In this document: positions 36,050 through 51,384 of the stretch, one piece after another | Layout: each line of letters starts with the position of its first letter | How positions within the stretch are numbered: the stretch's first letter is position 1 | Source of the DNA: Thalia democratica | Taxonomy: Eukaryota | Assembly: GCA_965202585.1 (NCBI GenBank) | Contig: OZ241832.1 | Location: 63,116,001 to 63,180,000 of the forward strand | Direction of reading: 5' to 3' | Length of the DNA stretch: 64,000 bases | Position numbers and translations under genes: made by a program | Notes under the pieces: generated by a model | Seen by the model: the letters and a program-made list of their open reading frames with translations, nothing else | Told to the model about the DNA's origin: nothing | Database searches by the model: none

Positions 36050-36520
<471 letters not shown>

Positions 36521-37894: not shown

Positions 37895-38143
<249 letters not shown>

Positions 38144-42500: not shown

Positions 42501-43227
42501 GTTTCTGTCAGACACGAATCAACACACTTCAACTGGAACCAGTTTAAACACAAATTATAGCTTATTCAACGTAAATAAACTTGACTTATAAAATATGCTT
42601 TTCAGCGTTTTACTACACAGACCATAGTTTTATTTCAGTGTAAAAAGTAAAATAAAAGCACATATTCAACAGTAGTCTTAAGATGAGAAGTTCAATTTAT
42701 AAAATTAGTAACGAAAACATCGCAAGATAAAAGTTAAATCGCGCAAACAACTGCAAGTGGTATCTACCTGGATGCCAGGTGAACATAAAGCCTGCTGTAC
42801 ATTCACCCTCAGTATTGCCCTTTCAACAAATTACAATAATATTAGATTTTCATATACACACAAATATCGAGTATACAAACCACGAGACTAAAGTGGAACA
42901 GAATATTAAGGTACAAACTTATTAGAAAATTTTGAAAACTGGGAGTAGAGAATCTTGAAAAGTGTTATCCAGATTTGTAGCACTACTAGTGGCTAAACGC
43001 TTGACGTTTGGTATCTGAACGTCTTGTTATTATCGCTCACATTTGTGTTTCAGAACTTTATTATTATCCAGTAAGAGACTTCTCTAGTCAATCATGTTTA
43101 TTTACTGATTATAAAGTTTGTAAATCAATCTAACAATGCTGCAATTTCATGATATTTGTTTGAATAATAATAATATATAAACAATGAACTTCACCGCACG
43201 ATCTACAACAACAGCATCCGAGACAAT

Positions 43228-43268
43228 CCTACGACCGGTTTCGTCCTTATTAGGACTCATCAGGCAGG
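43228..43268 (-). ncRNA. Type I hammerhead ribozyme 1
   Basis: CCUGC-CUGAUGA-GUCC(UAAUAA)GGAC-GAAA-CCGG-UC^GUAGG; predicted cleavage 3' of position 43233. Confidence 0.93.
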
Positions 43269-43555
43269 AATAGTCGCGTGAAACTGCTGTTGTGATCTAA
43301 CCAAGCGGGCTTAAGTACCAAGTACTGAAGCGTCCGTTTGTGGGTAAAGTCCGAAAAATTGACGCAGGCAAATCTTCACAGCTCAACGTCTTAGACATTG
43401 TCAGCTTAATGTGCGATTTTACTCTCTACGCTCGTTTTGATCAGTTTTAGCCAGTATTTATTTCGGCCATCGTCAACAATTTGAGATGTTTTTCGCCATC
43501 GAATATAAACAATGAACTTCACCGCACGATCTACAACAACAGCATCCGAGACAAT

Positions 43556-43596
43556 CCTACGACCGGTTTCGTCCTTATTAGGACTCATCAGGCAGG
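43556..43596 (-). ncRNA. Type I hammerhead ribozyme 2
   Basis: Identical core 328 bp from ribozyme 1; predicted cleavage 3' of position 43561. Confidence 0.93.
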
Positions 43597-43883
43597 AATA
43601 GTCGCGTGAAACCGCTGTTGTGATCTAACCAAGCGGGCTTAAGTACCAAGTACTGAAGCGTCCGTTTGTGGGTAAAGTCCGAAAAATTGACGCAGGCAAA
43701 TCTTCACAGCTCAACGTCTTAGACATTGTCAGCTTAATGTGCGATTTTACTCTCTACGCTCGTTTTGATCAGTTTTAGCCAGTATTTATTTCGGCCATCG
43801 TCAACAAGTTGAGATGTTTTTTGCCATCGAATATAAACAATGAACTTCACCGCACGATCTACAACAACAGCATCCGAGACAAT

Positions 43884-43924
43884 CCTACGACCGGTTTCGT
43901 CCTTATTAGGACTCATCAGGCAGG
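43884..43924 (-). ncRNA. Type I hammerhead ribozyme 3
   Basis: Identical core; predicted cleavage 3' of position 43889. Confidence 0.93.
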
Positions 43925-44105
43925 AATAGTCGCGTGAAACCGCTGTTGTGATCTAAAATCGCACACTAAGCTGACAATGTCTAAGACGTTGAGCTGTGAA
44001 GATTTGCTGCGTCAATTTTTCGGACTTTACCCACAAACGGACGCTTCAGTACTTGGTACTTAAGCCCGCTTGGTTAGATCACAACAGCGGTTTCACGCGA
44101 CTATT

Positions 44106-44146
44106 CCTGCCTGATGAGTCCCAATAAGGACGAAACCGGTCGTAGG
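44106..44146 (+). ncRNA. Type I hammerhead ribozyme 4
   Basis: Same core with loop II variant CAAUAA; predicted cleavage after 44141. Confidence 0.93.
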
Positions 44147-44433
44147 ATTGTCTCGGATGCTGTTGTTGTAGATCGTGCGGTGAAGTTCATTGTTTATATT
44201 CGATGGCGAAAAACATCTCAACTTGTTGACGATGGCCAAAATAAATACTGGCTAAAACTGATCAAAACGAGCGTAGAGAGTAAAATCGCACATTAAGCTG
44301 ACAATGTCTAAGACGTTGAGCTGTGAAGATTTGCCTGCGTCAATTTTTCGGACTTTACCCACAAACGGACGCTTCAGTACTTGGTACTTAAGCCCGCTTG
44401 GTTAGATCACAACAGCGGTTTCACGCGACTATT

Positions 44434-44474
44434 CCTGCCTGATGAGTCCTAATAAGGACGAAACCGGTCGTAGG
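44434..44474 (+). ncRNA. Type I hammerhead ribozyme 5
   Basis: Same core 328 bp from ribozyme 4; predicted cleavage after 44469. Confidence 0.93.
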
Positions 44475-47400
44475 ATTGTCTCGGATGCTGTTGTTGTAGA
44501 TCGTGCGGTGAAGTTCATTGTTTATATTCGATGGCGAAAAACATCTCAACTTGTTGACGATGGCCGAAATAAATATTGTTTAAATAAGAAATTTAAATAA
44601 CCTATAGATTACTTAATCAGTAAAAAAAGTAAAAACTTATGTTTTATCATGTATTAGTTAGAACCTTATATATTCATATAAGGGTCAAGTTAAAAATTTA
44701 TGTTTACAAAAAAAAAAAGACTTTATTGTATACTATAAGGTTTTAAGTAATTACAACCGGGAACTATTTTTGTATACAGTATGACTTAAGTAGTCTGATG
44801 ATTTAGAAACTCAGTTTTACAAACAACAGGTACAAATAGAATATAATAATTATGATTATTGAGAAACTGTATTTTTTTAACACTATAATGTATAACTTTA
44901 AGAAAGATTTCAACACAGTGTTTAAATTAAATAGTTAACCTTAAGCACTTTTCCTATTTGGATGAAGTTAATTATTTTAATATACTAAGACAAGACTTTA
45001 GGATTTCTAAAGCAATTTAAAAAAAAAAACATGTTTTTATTTCAACGAAAGTTTGATAGTTTAAGTTTCTTAAAATAAAACTAACATCTAGTTTAGTCAC
45101 TATTCATAGAAACTCTTGTTTTTTAGTAAACATAAGAACTATTATTAAAGTTTAGCATAGTTAAATTTAGTCAAAATTTGTCACAAAGAAACTTCAAAAC
45201 CAAAATTATAATTAAATAATTATTTTCGATGTTTATTTATACTTATAAAGTGCATAGTTGAACAAATACACTTTTAAGTTATTTTAAACTTTTGAACAAT
45301 CAAATTTTCTACTATATCCAGATGTATTTTTAATGTAGTAAAAAAAGAAGTTAACTAGCCTTGATTTGAATAAATAATTACTAAAGGTAGATAAAAACTA
45401 ATATTATTTCATTCTCAGTTTTTTTTTTTCATTTTTATAAAATATTCTAACTTACTTAAAATAACAAAGTTTTAACAATAATTATTTTTATATGGAACAA
45501 TGTTAGCTATTTACCTAGTATTTACTAAGCTTATTTTAAAAGGTTTATTGTAATAGTTTTGTATCCACTACTAACTTAGTCCGTAGTAAAAAAGGGCAAC
45601 AAAATAATTTAATACCATAAGGTATTATGAAGTAAACTTACTTTATATGTATAACAATCTTACAGTCGTTTAAAAACGTCGAAGATCAGTAAAGTTGGAT
45701 ATAGTCACAGAATAAAAAACTGAATTTACTACACAGAGGAAGCTTGTTAGTACAAGAATGCATGTAAAAACAAAATTATTTGCCTTTATATTGGGTTTAT
45801 GAGTGTTTTATTCAGCTTTACTAAAAGCTTTGCTGATAAGTTAGTAAAACATTTTAGTGACGCTAAAACAAACACTAGCCTACATAATAAAAATAAATTA
45901 AACTAAGTAATTATGGAGTCAAAAGTGGTTAAATCAAAGTCAAAGGTGTTAAAGTTATAATCCAATTAAGACATAAGACTAATCATATAGTTCAAAAAGT
46001 ATTTAAGTGGTATTAACTTGTAGTTGCGACAAGATTTTAACTAAATCAAAAAAAATCTTTTAAAACTCTACCATCCAAAAATTAAACCCAATGTTTTCAA
46101 AGTAGTAAGAGCAGAAACTTATTAACCAAATAAATACAGGTAGTAGATTAAAGTTTTGAAAAATATACATATTGGTGTTTCATTTCACTTTTAAAAGCTC
46201 TTTTTAGGTTTTTCTTAACAAGTTGTAAAAAAATACTTCTGATAACATATAAATAAAAAAATAGTAATAGTAGTATTTTTTAAAATATAATATTTATTAC
46301 TTACATAAAGTGCACAAAACTATCAATGGAAACACTGATATCTACATTCTTATACGTACTTATTCTGTAAATAATAAACAAAAGTAAGGTTTTGATACGA
46401 CGATTCACCATGATAAATAAATTTGAAAGCACAAATTAGAAATAAATAAAAAATACGCTGACGTTACTCACAAACGTTGGCATACAAACAAAATTAATAT
46501 TTGAATGAAGAATTAGATTCAGAGATTTGTAAAAATAATGTTGCACGTGAGACACATGGTTTTTTATTGTGCTGTTAGTTTTCAGTCAAGTGTACAACAG
46601 TGGAGTCTAGGCTGGTCACATTTTTTACTGACTAGCCCACAAACACTAGCTTACACAACAAAAATAAGTTTAATAAAGAAGTTTAGGGCGGTGTGGGTGG
46701 GATAGATTGTCAGGATGAAAGGCGCCGAAGGCACCAGCACCAAATATTACAAGATAATCATAACTTTGTCTAAATAGTTTAGACAATATAGATTTATTTA
46801 CAGACTAAACTATAATGATAATAAAAAATATTTTGTTCTTTTTTCCTCAGTAAGTTATCATTAGTACTTGAGAAGATTCTTTAACGGAACTTACAAGAGT
46901 AACATGTGTAATTAATGCAAGTTCTTTTATATATATATATAACAAAAATGAAAGTGCTTGTTTGTGACTTCACTAAAGGATTTACATAAATAAAATTAAT
47001 ATATTCTTATACTGTTTGACTTGATTTAACTAAAAAATGAAAATAACTACATAACTTAATCCAACAACTACTTTATAAATACTTAAGCTCTTAGTTCTTT
47101 TAAATATTCTACAAGCAAATAGTAAAATTTATTAGACTTTTTGAAAAGATAAAGTTTTTAGAAGTTATTTTTTTAAGTTGTTAAGTAGTTTAACAATAAA
47201 ATTAAAACAGGTTTTATGTCAATTTGCTTTGTATAATCTTTTTTCAAGTAATTTCAGTTTTTATTTAATCAATTTTTAAGAACACAAATTTTCACTAGTT
47301 GTTTTGTAACACACTATATCAAAACTTGCTACAAACATAAAAAATCTTTAACATTTAACAACATCTAGCAAATATTTATAGCTGAGTCAGTAAGTCATCG

Positions 47401-49903: not shown

Positions 49904-51384
49904 TTATTCAACAAAAAGTTTATATCTAAATTTAAAAGGATCTTTCTTTAAGTTTTTAAAAGTTTCAGGGACACTAGACCAAAACTTGGGACCCAAATAC
50001 CTAAAGCAGTTTAGGCCAAGTCTCGTTCTAGGTCTTTCAGTTACAAAATTCATTTTCTTTGAAAATCTTGTGTTGTGTGTGTGAACAGAGCTAGCAAGTG
50101 TAAATCTATTGTGTTCTACATCAAACCCTTTTATAGTATTACGCATCAACTTACAAATTTGCAATTTATACACATCTTTTAATTTTAGCACACCAGTTTT
50201 TTTAAATAAAGGGTTTGTTGTTGTCAAGGCAGGCACACGACAAACATACCTGATCACTCTTTTTTGCATACAAACAATTGGTTTTAAGTAACAGTCAGCA
50301 GCACTACCCAAACAGATATACAATATTGGATATGCGAATAAAACAAACTATAATATACCATTTTAAGTGTAAATGTGTCCAAATAATATCTCAATTTTGA
50401 CAAAACATAACAACTCCTAGACAATTTCGATTTCAGAGAACTCAAATGTTTCTTCCAATTCAGCTTATCATCCAAAACCACACCTAAGTATTTTATACTA
50501 TCACTCTGCTCAATAAGAAAACCATTAACCTTGACACTAAATTCACAATTTTTTGAAGTTTTATTAAAAAGCAAAAATTTAGTTTTTGAATAATTAATAA
50601 AAAGTTTATTAGCATGCAACCATTTATCAACTTTAACCAACTCCTTATTAATAATTTCATTTAAATACTCAGGATCACTGTGTTGGTAGCTCAAGCAGGC
50701 ATCATCCGCAAACAATCTCATATTTATCTCAGTAGAGGAAAAAATATCATTAATATACACAAGAAACAACAAAGGACCCAAACAAGAACCTTGTGGTATT
50801 CCAACATTCACAATTTCACGCTCAGACACAACATTATTTATGACCGTTGATTGACTTCTGTCTTTTAAATAATCTTTAAGTAAATTTAACATTGAACCTT
50901 TTATATTATAATTTTTAAGTTTAGATATTAGAATTTTATGATTAACCGTGTTAAATGCTTTAGCCAAATCAAAAATACAGAGCAATTTATTAATTTTCTC
51001 TCACCAGCCTCAATTAACTCATCAACAATCTGATTCACAGCTAGTTCAGTCGTACTATTCTCTCTAAACCCATACTGTTTTTCATGTAGCACCTCATTCA
51101 ACAAAAAGAATTTTTTCAATCTCTCACACACTAAAAACTCAAAAATTTTCGAAAATGGGGATAAAAGAGAAATAGGTCTGTAGTTATTGATGTTATTTTT
51201 TTTACCAGATTTATAAATAGGGATTACCTCAGCAAATTTAAGCGACTCAGGAAACACACCATACTCAACACATTTATTATACAATTTAGAAAGATACGGA
51301 GAAATTATTTTTGCACTGAGCTTCACAAAGCGAATATTAAGGACATCAGAACGCACACTTTTGTTTGGATTTTAAGTTTTAATA
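49904..51384 (-). pseudogene. LINE ORF2, reverse transcriptase half
   Basis: Motifs NYRPISLL, QYGFR, DLAKAFNTVNH, GIPQGSCLGPLLF, FADD, KYLGVVLD. In-frame TAA at 51374-51372 and 1-nt frameshifts near 50970 and 50305. Confidence 0.93.

What the first reader, a model, noticed from the sequence alone, without database searches (positions are those of the whole stretch)
43175..44575. Young 328-nt hammerhead retrozyme array predicted to make self-cleaving monomers or circRNA
Seen: five intact type I hammerhead cores spaced exactly 328 bp apart within each arm, in near-identical GC-rich units. Established: non-LTR retrozymes in animals are short tandem repeats with type I hammerheads, processed into circular RNAs and dependent on other elements' RT. 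Inference: this is a recent and probably active family. The ORF track shows only three spurious 60-aa ORFs here, so the ribozymes would be missed by routine annotation.
Basis: partly seen in the sequence, partly recalled or inferred. Interest (0 to 1): 0.9.

Follow-up and report, generated by a model that had tools for sequence, protein, structure and literature searches.

The report
Young hammerhead retrozyme, Penelope-style insertion
This is a real, recently inserted head-to-head array of a 328-base non-coding mobile repeat, each copy carrying an intact self-cleaving hammerhead ribozyme; it is a clear member of the animal "retrozyme" class described in 2020, and its insertion scars match those of Penelope-like retroelements.

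Summary
Window 43175-44584 is a head-to-head pair of arrays of a 328-bp unit: 2.4 copies with ribozyme sense on the minus strand, 1.9 on the plus strand. It carries five intact type I hammerhead motifs, against 0 expected by chance. Rfam's curated thresholds miss them; they score 39-41 bits against Hammerhead_HH9, which needs 52.

The family is dispersed across the 802-Mb genome, with 2,680 first-look candidates. The sampled copies are 96-99.7% like their consensus.

Insertions carry 8-14 bp AT-rich target-site duplications, fixed 3' ends, variable 5' truncation and frequent inverted arms. Each arm ends at one of two sites, about +58 or about +106-118 after the cleavage site. In all 16 independent inverted loci, one arm uses each site.

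[quoted passage not shown] No PLE sharing sequence with the unit was found.

Self-cleavage and circular RNA are inferred, not shown. RNA-library contigs cover only the repeat, and DNA carry-over is not excluded.

Verdict: new member of a known kind (animal non-LTR retrozymes). The scan has already found and followed up this same family on other DNA of this genome, with the same conclusion.

The parts
43156..43167 (.). Left copy of the target-site duplication, TTGTTTGAATAA. It is followed by 7 filler bases (43168-43174).
   Evidence: Read from the sequence. A contig in run X7 joins 43167 to 44593 with 4 letters between. That is an empty paralogue or allele holding a single copy of this 12-mer (tables 5 and 5c).
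43175..43956 (-). Arm 1, ribozyme sense on the minus strand. In map order it holds unit positions 1-58 (the short 3' end, at 43175), two full 328-nt units (43233-43560 and 43561-43888), and a 5'-truncated piece (unit 261-328).
   Evidence: TRF; BLAST mapping of the unit onto the window.
43210..43281 (-). Type I hammerhead ribozyme; cleavage between 43233 and 43232.
   Evidence: Hammerhead_HH9, 38.8 bits, E 7e-8, full-length alignment; core pattern.
43538..43609 (-). Type I hammerhead ribozyme; cleavage between 43561 and 43560.
43866..43937 (-). Type I hammerhead ribozyme; cleavage between 43889 and 43888.
43954..43956 (.). Head-to-head junction of the two arms. The 3 nt (TAA) are shared by both, i.e. 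microhomology.
   Evidence: The BLAST mapping shows the arms overlapping by 3 nt. Other loci show 1-2 nt of overlap or a gap of about 4-9 nt between the mapped arms at their junctions.
43954..44575 (+). Arm 2, ribozyme sense on the plus strand: a 5'-truncated piece (unit 140-328), one full unit (44142-44469), then unit 1 to about 106 (the long 3' end, which carries the tail).
   Evidence: TRF; BLAST mapping.
44093..44164 (+). Type I hammerhead ribozyme (loop 2 variant CAAUAA); cleavage after 44141.
   Evidence: Hammerhead_HH9, 41.2 bits, E 1.2e-8; core pattern.
44421..44492 (+). Type I hammerhead ribozyme; cleavage after 44469.
44142..44469 (+). The one complete monomer of the plus arm, bounded by two cleavage sites. 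This is the predicted 328-nt linear or circular RNA.
   Evidence: Coordinates. The MFE fold is -104.6 kcal/mol, z -4.0 against shuffles, and helices I and II of the ribozyme are kept in it.
44576..44587 (.). Right copy of the target-site duplication, TTGTTTAAATAA (1 mismatch to the left copy).
   Evidence: Sequence; the empty-site contig in X7.

Best explanation
**What it is.** The locus is a single insertion of a non-autonomous, non-coding retroelement of the animal non-LTR retrozyme class.

**Anatomy (shown).**
- Each 328-nt unit carries a canonical metazoan type I hammerhead. Helix I has 6 bp and is extended by a long stem. Helix II has 4 bp with a 6-nt loop. Helix III has only 2 bp around the palindrome ACCGGU.
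- The whole head-to-head array sits between one pair of target-site duplications.
- Family members have fixed 3' ends at two alternative sites, variable 5' truncation, and frequent inverted arms.

**Life cycle (inferred from the families named).**
1. Transcripts spanning two or more units pair their ACCGGU segments into a double hammerhead.
2. [quoted passage not shown]
3. A host tRNA ligase can circularise these monomers.
4. A circular or multimeric RNA is copied by the RT/GIY-YIG protein of a Penelope-like element. That protein nicks both strands of an AT-rich target and starts reverse transcription at two adjacent internal RNA sites, about +58 and about +106-118 from the cleavage site, one per strand.
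5. The two cDNAs are joined in the middle by end joining.

This would give two inverted, 5'-truncated tandem arms with the ~50-60-nt "tail" at one end only.

**This copy's history.** After insertion, a segmental duplication carried the locus to a twin 325 kb away, and one of the two has since gained or lost a unit.
For: **Ribozyme**
- There are five full-length matches to a type I hammerhead model, and 5 core matches against 0 expected.
- Helix I covaries between this family (UCCUGC/GUAGGA) and a sister family with the same core (GACUGA/UCAGUC). Helix II changes GUCC/GGAC to GUUC/GAAC in another relative.
- RNAalifold finds 7 of 17 pairs with compensatory changes.
- Cofolding two copies forms the intermolecular ACCGGU helix: -42.9 kcal/mol against 2 x -19.4. 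This is the architecture described for canonical metazoan hammerheads (PMC4209133).
- The monomer fold has z = -4.0.

**Mobility**
- The family gives 156+ matches from 40 scored of 2,680 candidates, on many chromosomes.
- Of 17 independent loci in hand, all have 3' ends at unit 55-60 or 111-116 (by BLAST mapping), and 5' ends anywhere from 1 to 306.
- TSDs of 8-14 bp (15% GC) flank whole arrays, including inverted ones.
- An empty-site contig confirms this locus's TSD.
- Units within an array, including across arms, differ by 2.3 nt on average, against 9.3 between arrays (p 1.5e-6).

**PLE signature**
- In 16 of 16 inverted loci, one arm ends at the short site and the other at the long site. 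Chance expectation is about 0.47 per locus.
- The literature describes 5' truncation, partial tandems, an adjacent inverted 5'-truncated copy and a tail at only one end as PLE hallmarks (PMC8557442).
- It also shows a PLE protein that cleaves and extends both strands, and starts RT at two adjacent internal sites in AT-rich targets (PMC11167929).
- A resident GIY-YIG family (ORFs 779-918 aa, copies 94-99% alike) shows the same rule in 7 of 7 head-to-head pairs, with a tail of about 70 nt.
- No poly(A) or microsatellite is seen at the 3' ends.
Against: - No autonomous partner was identified. Neither the 24 GIY-YIG/PLE loci and spacers fetched nor two sampled PLE families share significant sequence with the unit.
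- One PLE family shows no hammerhead at all. The other carries only minimal hammerheads unlike this one.
- Transcription is not demonstrated. The RNA-library evidence is contigs only, from marine metatranscriptomes at 90-99% identity, and a multicopy repeat could appear through DNA carry-over.
- No read-level 5'/3' ends at the GUC sites, and no circular junctions, could be examined.
- The lower substitution rate in the ribozyme (0.95% against 1.69%) is only borderline (p 0.053).
- The copies sampled are the best BLAST hits, so the family's age distribution is biased towards young copies.
- Part of the copy number comes from segmental duplication rather than transposition.
Confidence: 0.8

Rival explanations
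1. The family is mobilised by a LINE-type (non-PLE) reverse transcriptase. On this view the head-to-head structure is classical L1-style twin priming.
For: 5' truncation, inversions and long TSDs are also LINE hallmarks. A degraded RVT_1-type element lies 5.5 kb away, at 49904-51356 on the minus strand.
Against: - The 3' ends carry no poly(A) or simple-repeat tail.
- Both outer ends of inverted insertions sit at fixed RNA positions. Twin priming gives a variable internal priming site.
- The two alternative 3' ends lie ~50-60 nt apart, with strict one-of-each pairing in 16 of 16 loci. That matches the PLE tail and the resident PLE family, not LINEs.
Confidence: 0.08
2. It is a hammerhead-bearing satellite or local palindrome that arose and spread at the DNA level (unequal crossing-over, replication fold-back, segmental duplication) without an RNA intermediate.
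For: The twin locus 325 kb away is a segmental duplicate (flanks 97.8-99.4% identical) and has one unit fewer. Four other loci share flanks. So DNA-level copying and copy-number change do occur.
Against: - At least 17 loci have unrelated flanks, each with its own TSD.
- The pattern of fixed 3' ends and variable 5' ends is not expected from DNA rearrangement.
- Arrays are short (1-4 units) and dispersed on many chromosomes.
- An empty site with a single TSD copy exists.
Confidence: 0.04
3. The array is a genuine retrozyme insertion, but it is now an inert relic. It is not transcribed, or its minimal-helix-III ribozymes do not cleave in vivo, so no monomer or circle is made from this family today.
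For: - No read-level RNA evidence exists, and transcription is not shown.
- Helix III is too short for a monomeric ribozyme.
- The anole PLE hammerhead needed protein to cleave, and no cleaved ends were seen in RNA-seq (PMC11167929).
- This copy predates a segmental duplication with 0.6-2.2% flank divergence.
Against: - All five cores are intact, and the commonest ribozyme variant accounts for 22 of the 65 motif hits, some of them spurious, in the loci in hand.
- Copies up to 100% identical to this unit lie on other chromosomes.
- In RNA libraries, contigs cover only the repeat, in three studies.
- Related animal retrozymes with dimeric hammerheads are abundantly expressed as circles (PMC7229834).
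Confidence: 0.2
4. The unit is not an independent retrozyme. It is a run of solo pseudo-LTRs of an autonomous Penelope-like element that happens not to be in the sample.
For: PLE pLTRs carry hammerheads and form partial tandems, and Xenopus retrozymes are sister to PLE pLTRs (bioRxiv 10.64898/2026.07.22.740005). The insertion geometry is the same as for PLEs.
Against: - No ORF of 150 aa or more, and no match to the PLE protein, lies in the ~3.5-4 kb sampled around six related hammerhead loci, apart from two ORFs of about 230 aa with no significant PLE-type Pfam domain.
- There is no match to the PLE protein in the 1.5-kb flanks of the 30 family loci.
- Units repeat seamlessly at 328 nt.
- The two sampled PLE families have no hammerhead or only minimal ones, and no significant similarity to the unit.
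Confidence: 0.1

Closest known systems
Animal non-LTR retrozymes (Cervera & de la Pena 2020, PMC7229834)
   Same: - Tandem units within the published size ranges (RNAs ~170-400 nt, repeats 150-450 bp), each with a type I hammerhead.
- No LTR, PBS, PPT or ORF.
- GC below 50%.
- TSDs longer than 4 bp.
- A stable self-paired monomer fold that leaves the ribozyme able to form.
- Thousands of copies.
   Different: - The unit sequence is unrelated to the published coral, mussel and axolotl families as far as could be checked.
- Expression and circularity are not shown here.
- The inverted head-to-head arms and the two-site 3' ends seen here are not mentioned in that paper.
Penelope-like elements: insertion architecture and hammerheads (PMC8557442, PMC11167929, PMC4209133)
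   Same: - 5' truncation, partial tandems and an adjacent inverted 5'-truncated copy.
- A tail present at one end only.
- AT-rich targets.
- A hammerhead upstream of the RT start sites.
- The same rule holds in this genome's own GIY-YIG elements.
   Different: - There is no RT/EN ORF.
- The tail is ~50-60 nt rather than 30-40.
- The ribozyme is the canonical type with loop-loop architecture, not the minimal variant found in this genome's PLE spacers.
- No sequence is shared with the sampled PLEs.
Newt satellite 2 / axolotl retrozymes with dimeric hammerheads
   Same: A very short helix III capped by a palindromic sequence, so two tandem ribozymes are expected to pair into a double hammerhead. 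Unit size is about 330-350 nt.
   Different: Those are vertebrate families in very large arrays or copy numbers (up to 120,000). Here the arrays are 1-4 units, and insertion boundaries can be read.
Rfam Hammerhead_HH9 (RF02275)
   Same: It is the best-scoring covariance model, aligned end to end with the same helix I/II layout and a similar loop 2.
   Different: The scores of 39-41 bits fall below the gathering score of 52, and helix III is 5 nt shorter. HH9 is a single-copy conserved motif (my own knowledge, not checked here), not a repeat, so this is not a member of that family.
Plant LTR retrozymes (PMC4918200)
   Same: Non-autonomous elements whose hammerheads delimit an RNA that circularises and is thought to be the template for a borrowed RT.
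   Different: The plant elements have type III hammerheads inside LTRs, PBS/PPT, 4-bp TSDs, Gypsy-type mobilisation and circles of 600-1000 nt.

Membership tests
Animal non-LTR retrozyme | Type I hammerhead ribozyme in every unit | tested here: met
   There are five full-length type I model alignments. The conserved core is intact in 5 of 5. Helices I and II are supported by compensatory changes in relatives.
Animal non-LTR retrozyme | Short head-to-tail tandem repeats of about 150-450 bp | tested here: met
   Period 328, with 2.4 and 1.9 copies. Other loci hold 1-4 units.
Animal non-LTR retrozyme | No LTR/PBS/PPT and no coding capacity | tested here: met
   The only ORFs are three of 60 aa, and the one tested has no Pfam hit. 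No terminal direct repeats other than the unit itself. PBS and PPT were not searched for formally.
Animal non-LTR retrozyme | GC below 50% and TSDs longer than 4 bp | tested here: met
   The unit is 44% GC. TSDs are 8-14 bp at 9 loci. The empty site is seen.
Animal non-LTR retrozyme | Monomer RNA predicted to adopt a stable, highly self-paired structure | tested here: met
   MFE -104.6 kcal/mol, z -3.99, with 0 of 100 shuffles folding as well.
Animal non-LTR retrozyme | Expressed as monomeric linear and circular RNA | tested here: inconclusive
   Metatranscriptome contigs (run X1, 216 contigs; also X2 and X3) lie only on the repeat and not on its flanks. But they are contigs, and DNA carry-over of a multicopy repeat is not excluded.
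Animal non-LTR retrozyme | Self-cleavage at the predicted site | not testable with these tools
   This needs in vitro transcription. Only the fold and the dimer prediction are available.
PLE-mobilised (non-autonomous PLE) element | 5' truncation, partial tandems and an adjacent inverted 5'-truncated copy | tested here: met
   Of 17 independent loci, 9 are inverted, and 5' ends range from 1 to 306.
PLE-mobilised (non-autonomous PLE) element | Two alternative 3' ends (the tail), with the tail at only one end of an insertion | tested here: met
   Ends fall at unit 51-60 or 106-118. All 16 inverted loci are heterotypic. The resident PLE family gives 7 of 7.
PLE-mobilised (non-autonomous PLE) element | Sequence similarity to an autonomous PLE at the 3' end or pLTR | tested here: not met
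   No BLAST similarity to the 18 GIY-YIG loci at E up to 1. Only a 19-nt match, E 0.013, in three spacers of a second PLE family. The sampling is incomplete: 3,227 PLE candidates exist.
Rfam Hammerhead_HH9 (RF02275) | Score at or above the curated gathering threshold | tested here: not met
   38.8-41.2 bits against a threshold of 52.

The most novel reading that the evidence does not exclude
The strict one-of-each pairing may be a real mechanistic rule of Penelope-type integration. It was seen in 16 of 16 retrozyme insertions and 7 of 7 resident PLE pairs: the short 3' end sits on one arm and the long, tailed end on the other. On this reading a dimeric RT/EN complex primes on both nicked DNA strands at once, from two adjacent start sites on one circular or multimeric RNA. 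This young, small, ORF-less family would then be a natural minimal substrate that makes the long-open question of who mobilises animal retrozymes, and how, directly testable. The published in vitro work saw no strand preference for the two start sites, so coupling within one event would be new.
Probability: 0.3. Interest if true: 0.6.

Novelty: new member of a known kind. Interest (0 to 1): 0.4.

Why it matters
Animal retrozymes are abundant sources of small ribozyme-made circular RNAs, but their mobilising enzyme has been argued only from co-occurrence and pLTR phylogeny.

This family is young enough that insertion boundaries, TSDs, 5' truncation points and arm junctions can be read base by base. 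They reproduce the Penelope signature that the same genome's autonomous elements show. That is independent, structural support for PLE-driven mobilisation, and it offers a compact 328-nt substrate for testing it.

For annotation, it shows that curated Rfam thresholds miss thousands of functional-looking hammerheads in this genome.

For the locus itself, nothing suggests a host function.

Tried and rejected
1. **Rfam at gathering thresholds** over the whole window: no hit. Hits appear only in E-value mode.
2. **Search for the autonomous partner.**
   - BLAST of the unit against 18 GIY-YIG loci gave nothing, and against 3 PLE spacers only a 19-nt match.
   - Rfam E-value scans of 21 PLE loci or spacers found no hammerhead.
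   - Six other hammerhead loci, sampled over ~3.5-4 kb around the ribozyme, had no RT/EN ORF.
   - The 19-nt match between unit 40-58 and the ORF start of PLE family 2 (E 0.013) is not conserved in a sister copy and was judged chance.
3. **Local structure in the two tails.** Neither the retrozyme nor the PLE tail folds better than shuffles (z -0.98 and +1.19).
4. **Selection on the ribozyme** from within-family variation: only borderline (p 0.053).
5. **Expression.** Both run searches returned only contig-kept runs, so starts, ends, strand and circular joints could not be read.
7. **A paper search for the core sequence** returned only engineered ribozymes.
8. **The organism** could not be named. 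It is an animal genome of 802 Mb and about 25% GC, and its repeat turns up in marine metatranscriptomes.


Full report
**1. Observation**

The stretch 43175-44584 is non-coding DNA of 44% GC inside a window of 25% GC. Tandem Repeats Finder gives two abutting arrays of period 328: 43175-43956 (2.4 copies, 99% matches) and 43954-44575 (1.9 copies, 98%). The two arrays are reverse complements of each other, with inverted arms of 521 and 511 nt at 99%. So the locus is a head-to-head pair of short tandem arrays.

The hammerhead core pattern occurs five times in the 64-kb window, all here, against none in 100 shuffles. Spacing is exactly 328 within each arm. On the minus strand the cuts fall between 43233/43232, 43561/43560 and 43889/43888. 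The three 60-aa ORFs are there, and the one tested has no Pfam match.

**2. The ribozyme**

At Rfam's curated thresholds the window has no hit. In E-value mode all five motifs align end to end with the type I model Hammerhead_HH9 at 38.8-41.2 bits (E 1e-8 to 7e-8). The gathering score is 52, and the shortfall comes from a helix III that is 5 nt shorter than the model.

The motif has these parts:
- a 6-bp helix I (UCCUGC/GUAGGA), extended by further pairs;
- a 4-bp helix II (GUCC/GGAC) with a 6-nt loop;
- the invariant CUGAUGA and GAAA;
- a helix III of two pairs around the self-complementary ACCGGU;
- the cleavage triplet GUC.

This is exactly the "canonical metazoan type I" layout. In that layout an unstable helix III with a palindromic cap makes two neighbouring ribozymes pair into an active dimer (PMC4209133).

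Several results support this reading:
- Cofolding two copies forms the intermolecular ACCGGU helix (-42.9 kcal/mol against 2 x -19.4). The lone motif mispairs its core.
- A sister family elsewhere in the genome keeps the same core and loop 2 but has a fully swapped helix I (GACUGA/UCAGUC). Another relative changes helix II to GUUC/GAAC.
- RNAalifold finds compensatory changes in 7 of 17 pairs.
- The 328-nt monomer folds into a long branched rod (-104.6 kcal/mol, z -4.0) that keeps helices I and II, as described for animal retrozyme circles (PMC7229834).

**3. The family**

The window's genome is 802 Mb. A BLAST of one unit gave 156+ matches from only 40 scored of 2,680 first-look candidates, on at least ten large contigs. 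Thirty full units from the loci fetched are 96-99.7% identical to their consensus. That sample is biased towards the best matches.

A run of a coded organism (X7, kind not recorded) piles contigs on the repeat at 100-1000 times the summed depth of the flanks.

The hammerhead model also has 33,509 rough candidates in the genome, so several ribozyme-bearing families coexist.

**4. Insertion anatomy**

I mapped the unit onto 22 distinct loci, 17 of them independent after removing segmental duplicates. Positions are counted in ribozyme sense from the cleavage site.
- Every arm ends 3' at unit 55-60 or at 111-116 by BLAST mapping. Across all loci the ranges are 51-60 and 106-118, because the exact base is blurred by AT-rich microhomology.
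- The 5' ends fall anywhere from 1 to 306.
- Whole arrays, simple or inverted, are flanked by AT-rich direct duplications of 8-14 bp (15% GC). Some have a few filler bases.

For this locus the duplication is TTGTTT[G/A]AATAA, at 43156-43167 and 44576-44587. A contig in X7 joins 43167 to 44593, that is, an empty paralogue or allele with a single copy of the 12-mer.

Arm junctions show 1-3 nt of overlap or a gap of about 4-9 nt between the mapped arms; here it is 3 nt at 43954-43956.

Units within one array, including units on opposite arms, differ by 2.3 nt on average, against 9.3 between arrays (p 1.5e-6).

Together this says each array, both arms included, was made in one target-primed event from one template lineage, and that the tandem units were copied seamlessly from a multimeric or circular RNA. 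None of the 3' ends read carries a poly(A) or simple-repeat tail.

**5. Whose machinery**

Nine of the 17 loci are head-to-head, and seven more can be read directly from the table. In all 16, one arm ends at the short site and the other at the long site. With about 60% short ends overall, chance gives about 0.47 per locus.

Three further loci carry short internal inverted fragments that reach no 3' end. They do not bear on the rule.

The literature on Penelope-like elements describes just this pattern:
- heavy 5' truncation, partial tandems, an adjacent inverted 5'-truncated copy, and an extension or "tail" at only one end (PMC8557442);
- a purified PLE protein that cleaves and extends both DNA strands, prefers AT-rich targets, and starts reverse transcription at two adjacent internal RNA sites that define the tail, downstream of the hammerhead (PMC11167929).

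The genome itself supplies a control. A GIY-YIG search finds 69+ hits, many in close inverted pairs. One family of about 3.2 kb has open frames of 779-918 aa. Its nearest Atlas clusters carry RT, HTH_animal and GIY-YIG domains, and its copies are 94-99% alike. It has short and long 3' ends about 70 nt apart, and 7 of 7 head-to-head pairs are heterotypic. A second family, 40% identical with ORFs of about 960 aa, sits in seamless tandems.

I could not find the partner:
- The unit shares no significant sequence with any sampled PLE.
- Family 1 shows no hammerhead.
- Family 2 has only minimal hammerheads in its spacers. This echoes the coral case, where canonical motifs sit in retrozymes and minimal ones in PLEs.

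So "works like a PLE passenger" is well supported, while "derived from a known PLE here" failed the one test I could run.

**6. History of this copy**

MH2-domain exon fragments of a Smad-like gene lie about 5 kb upstream on the plus strand (window 36083-36181 and 37937-38077). They recur in roughly ten paralogous blocks on the same contig.

Only one other block, 325 kb away, carries the retrozyme. It has the same flanks (97.8-99.4% identical), the same junction and the same ends, but one unit fewer in the minus arm. The insertion therefore predates the latest segmental duplication and postdates the earlier ones. Array length has changed since.

**7. Expression**

Both run searches returned only runs kept as contigs. 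Laid on 42900-44800, one marine metatranscriptome (X1) places 216 contigs on 43156-44627 and none on the flanks. Two other RNA-labelled studies give a few contigs at 90-95% identity, two of which bridge the cleavage site at 44469.

This shows that the repeat, or close relatives, is present in RNA libraries. It does not show transcription, cleavage, strand or circularity, and DNA carry-over of a repeat with thousands of copies cannot be excluded.

The sense strand has a T5 run in every unit. Long Pol III multimers therefore seem unlikely (inference).

**8. What this locus could produce (inference)**

- Plus-strand transcription would yield antisense RNA from arm 1, then two ribozymes and one complete monomer (44142-44469).
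- Minus-strand transcription would yield three ribozymes and two monomers.
- Any transcript crossing 43954-43956 could fold back into more than 500 bp of duplex.

**9. Verdict**

It is a new member of a known kind, animal non-LTR retrozymes (PMC7229834). Its unusually legible scars tie it to Penelope-type integration, in line with the hypothesis of PMC7229834 and bioRxiv 10.64898/2026.07.22.740005.

Earlier notes of this scan on other DNA of the same genome reached the same reading for the same 328-bp family. I derived it independently and tested it here.

Noticed in passing
window 49904-51356 (minus strand): Three overlapping or adjacent ORFs, two of them with RVT_1 reverse-transcriptase matches (E 4.5e-22 and 2e-8). 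This is a degraded LINE-like element 5.5 kb from the array.
   Followed up: partly
window 36083-36181 and 37937-38077 (plus strand); G000 C8 62.05-63.48 Mb: Smad MH2-domain exon fragments. The same two fragments recur in roughly ten blocks along 1.4 Mb of this contig, which suggests a segmentally duplicated Smad-like gene or pseudogene cluster. Only the last two blocks carry the retrozyme.
   Followed up: partly
L002 / L012 (G000 C8:63484741-63485823): This is a twin of the locus 325 kb away, with identical flanks, junction and ends but one full unit fewer in the minus arm. Copy number therefore changed after the segmental duplication.
   Followed up: yes
L050 3473-3503 (-), L051 3545-3575 and 3880-3910 (-), L052 519-549 (+): A second repeat family has the same hammerhead core, loop 2 and ACCGGUC, but a completely swapped helix I (GACUGA/UCAGUC) and an unrelated body. 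Related families at 74-81% identity to the 328-nt unit are in L053 and L054.
   Followed up: partly
L043-L048 (e.g. L043 5407-8961): A young Penelope-like family of about 3.2 kb has a C-terminal GIY-YIG domain, open frames up to 918 aa, no detectable hammerhead, frequent head-to-head pairs, and two alternative 3' ends about 70 nt apart, always one of each per pair.
   Followed up: yes
L056 849-869, L058 722-742, L034 945-965 (-), L041 2321-2345; G000 C7:24117525-24127369: A second Penelope-like family (40% identical protein, ORFs of about 960 aa) stands in seamless tandems of period about 3.58 kb. It has a minimal hammerhead (CUGAAGA ... GAAAGUA with a 7-bp helix I) in the spacer. L057 holds a third minimal variant.
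   Followed up: partly
L049 443-465 and 776-798: A pair of minimal hammerheads 333 nt apart (CUGACGAG ... GAAAGUA), unrelated in sequence to the 328-nt family. It lies 17.7 Mb upstream on the same contig.
   Followed up: partly
L014, L016, L023, L026 (G000 C5 10.56-11.56 Mb): Four copies of the same 1.4-unit insertion share flanks at 96-97% identity. This retrozyme copy rides inside a larger dispersed or segmentally duplicated repeat.
   Followed up: partly
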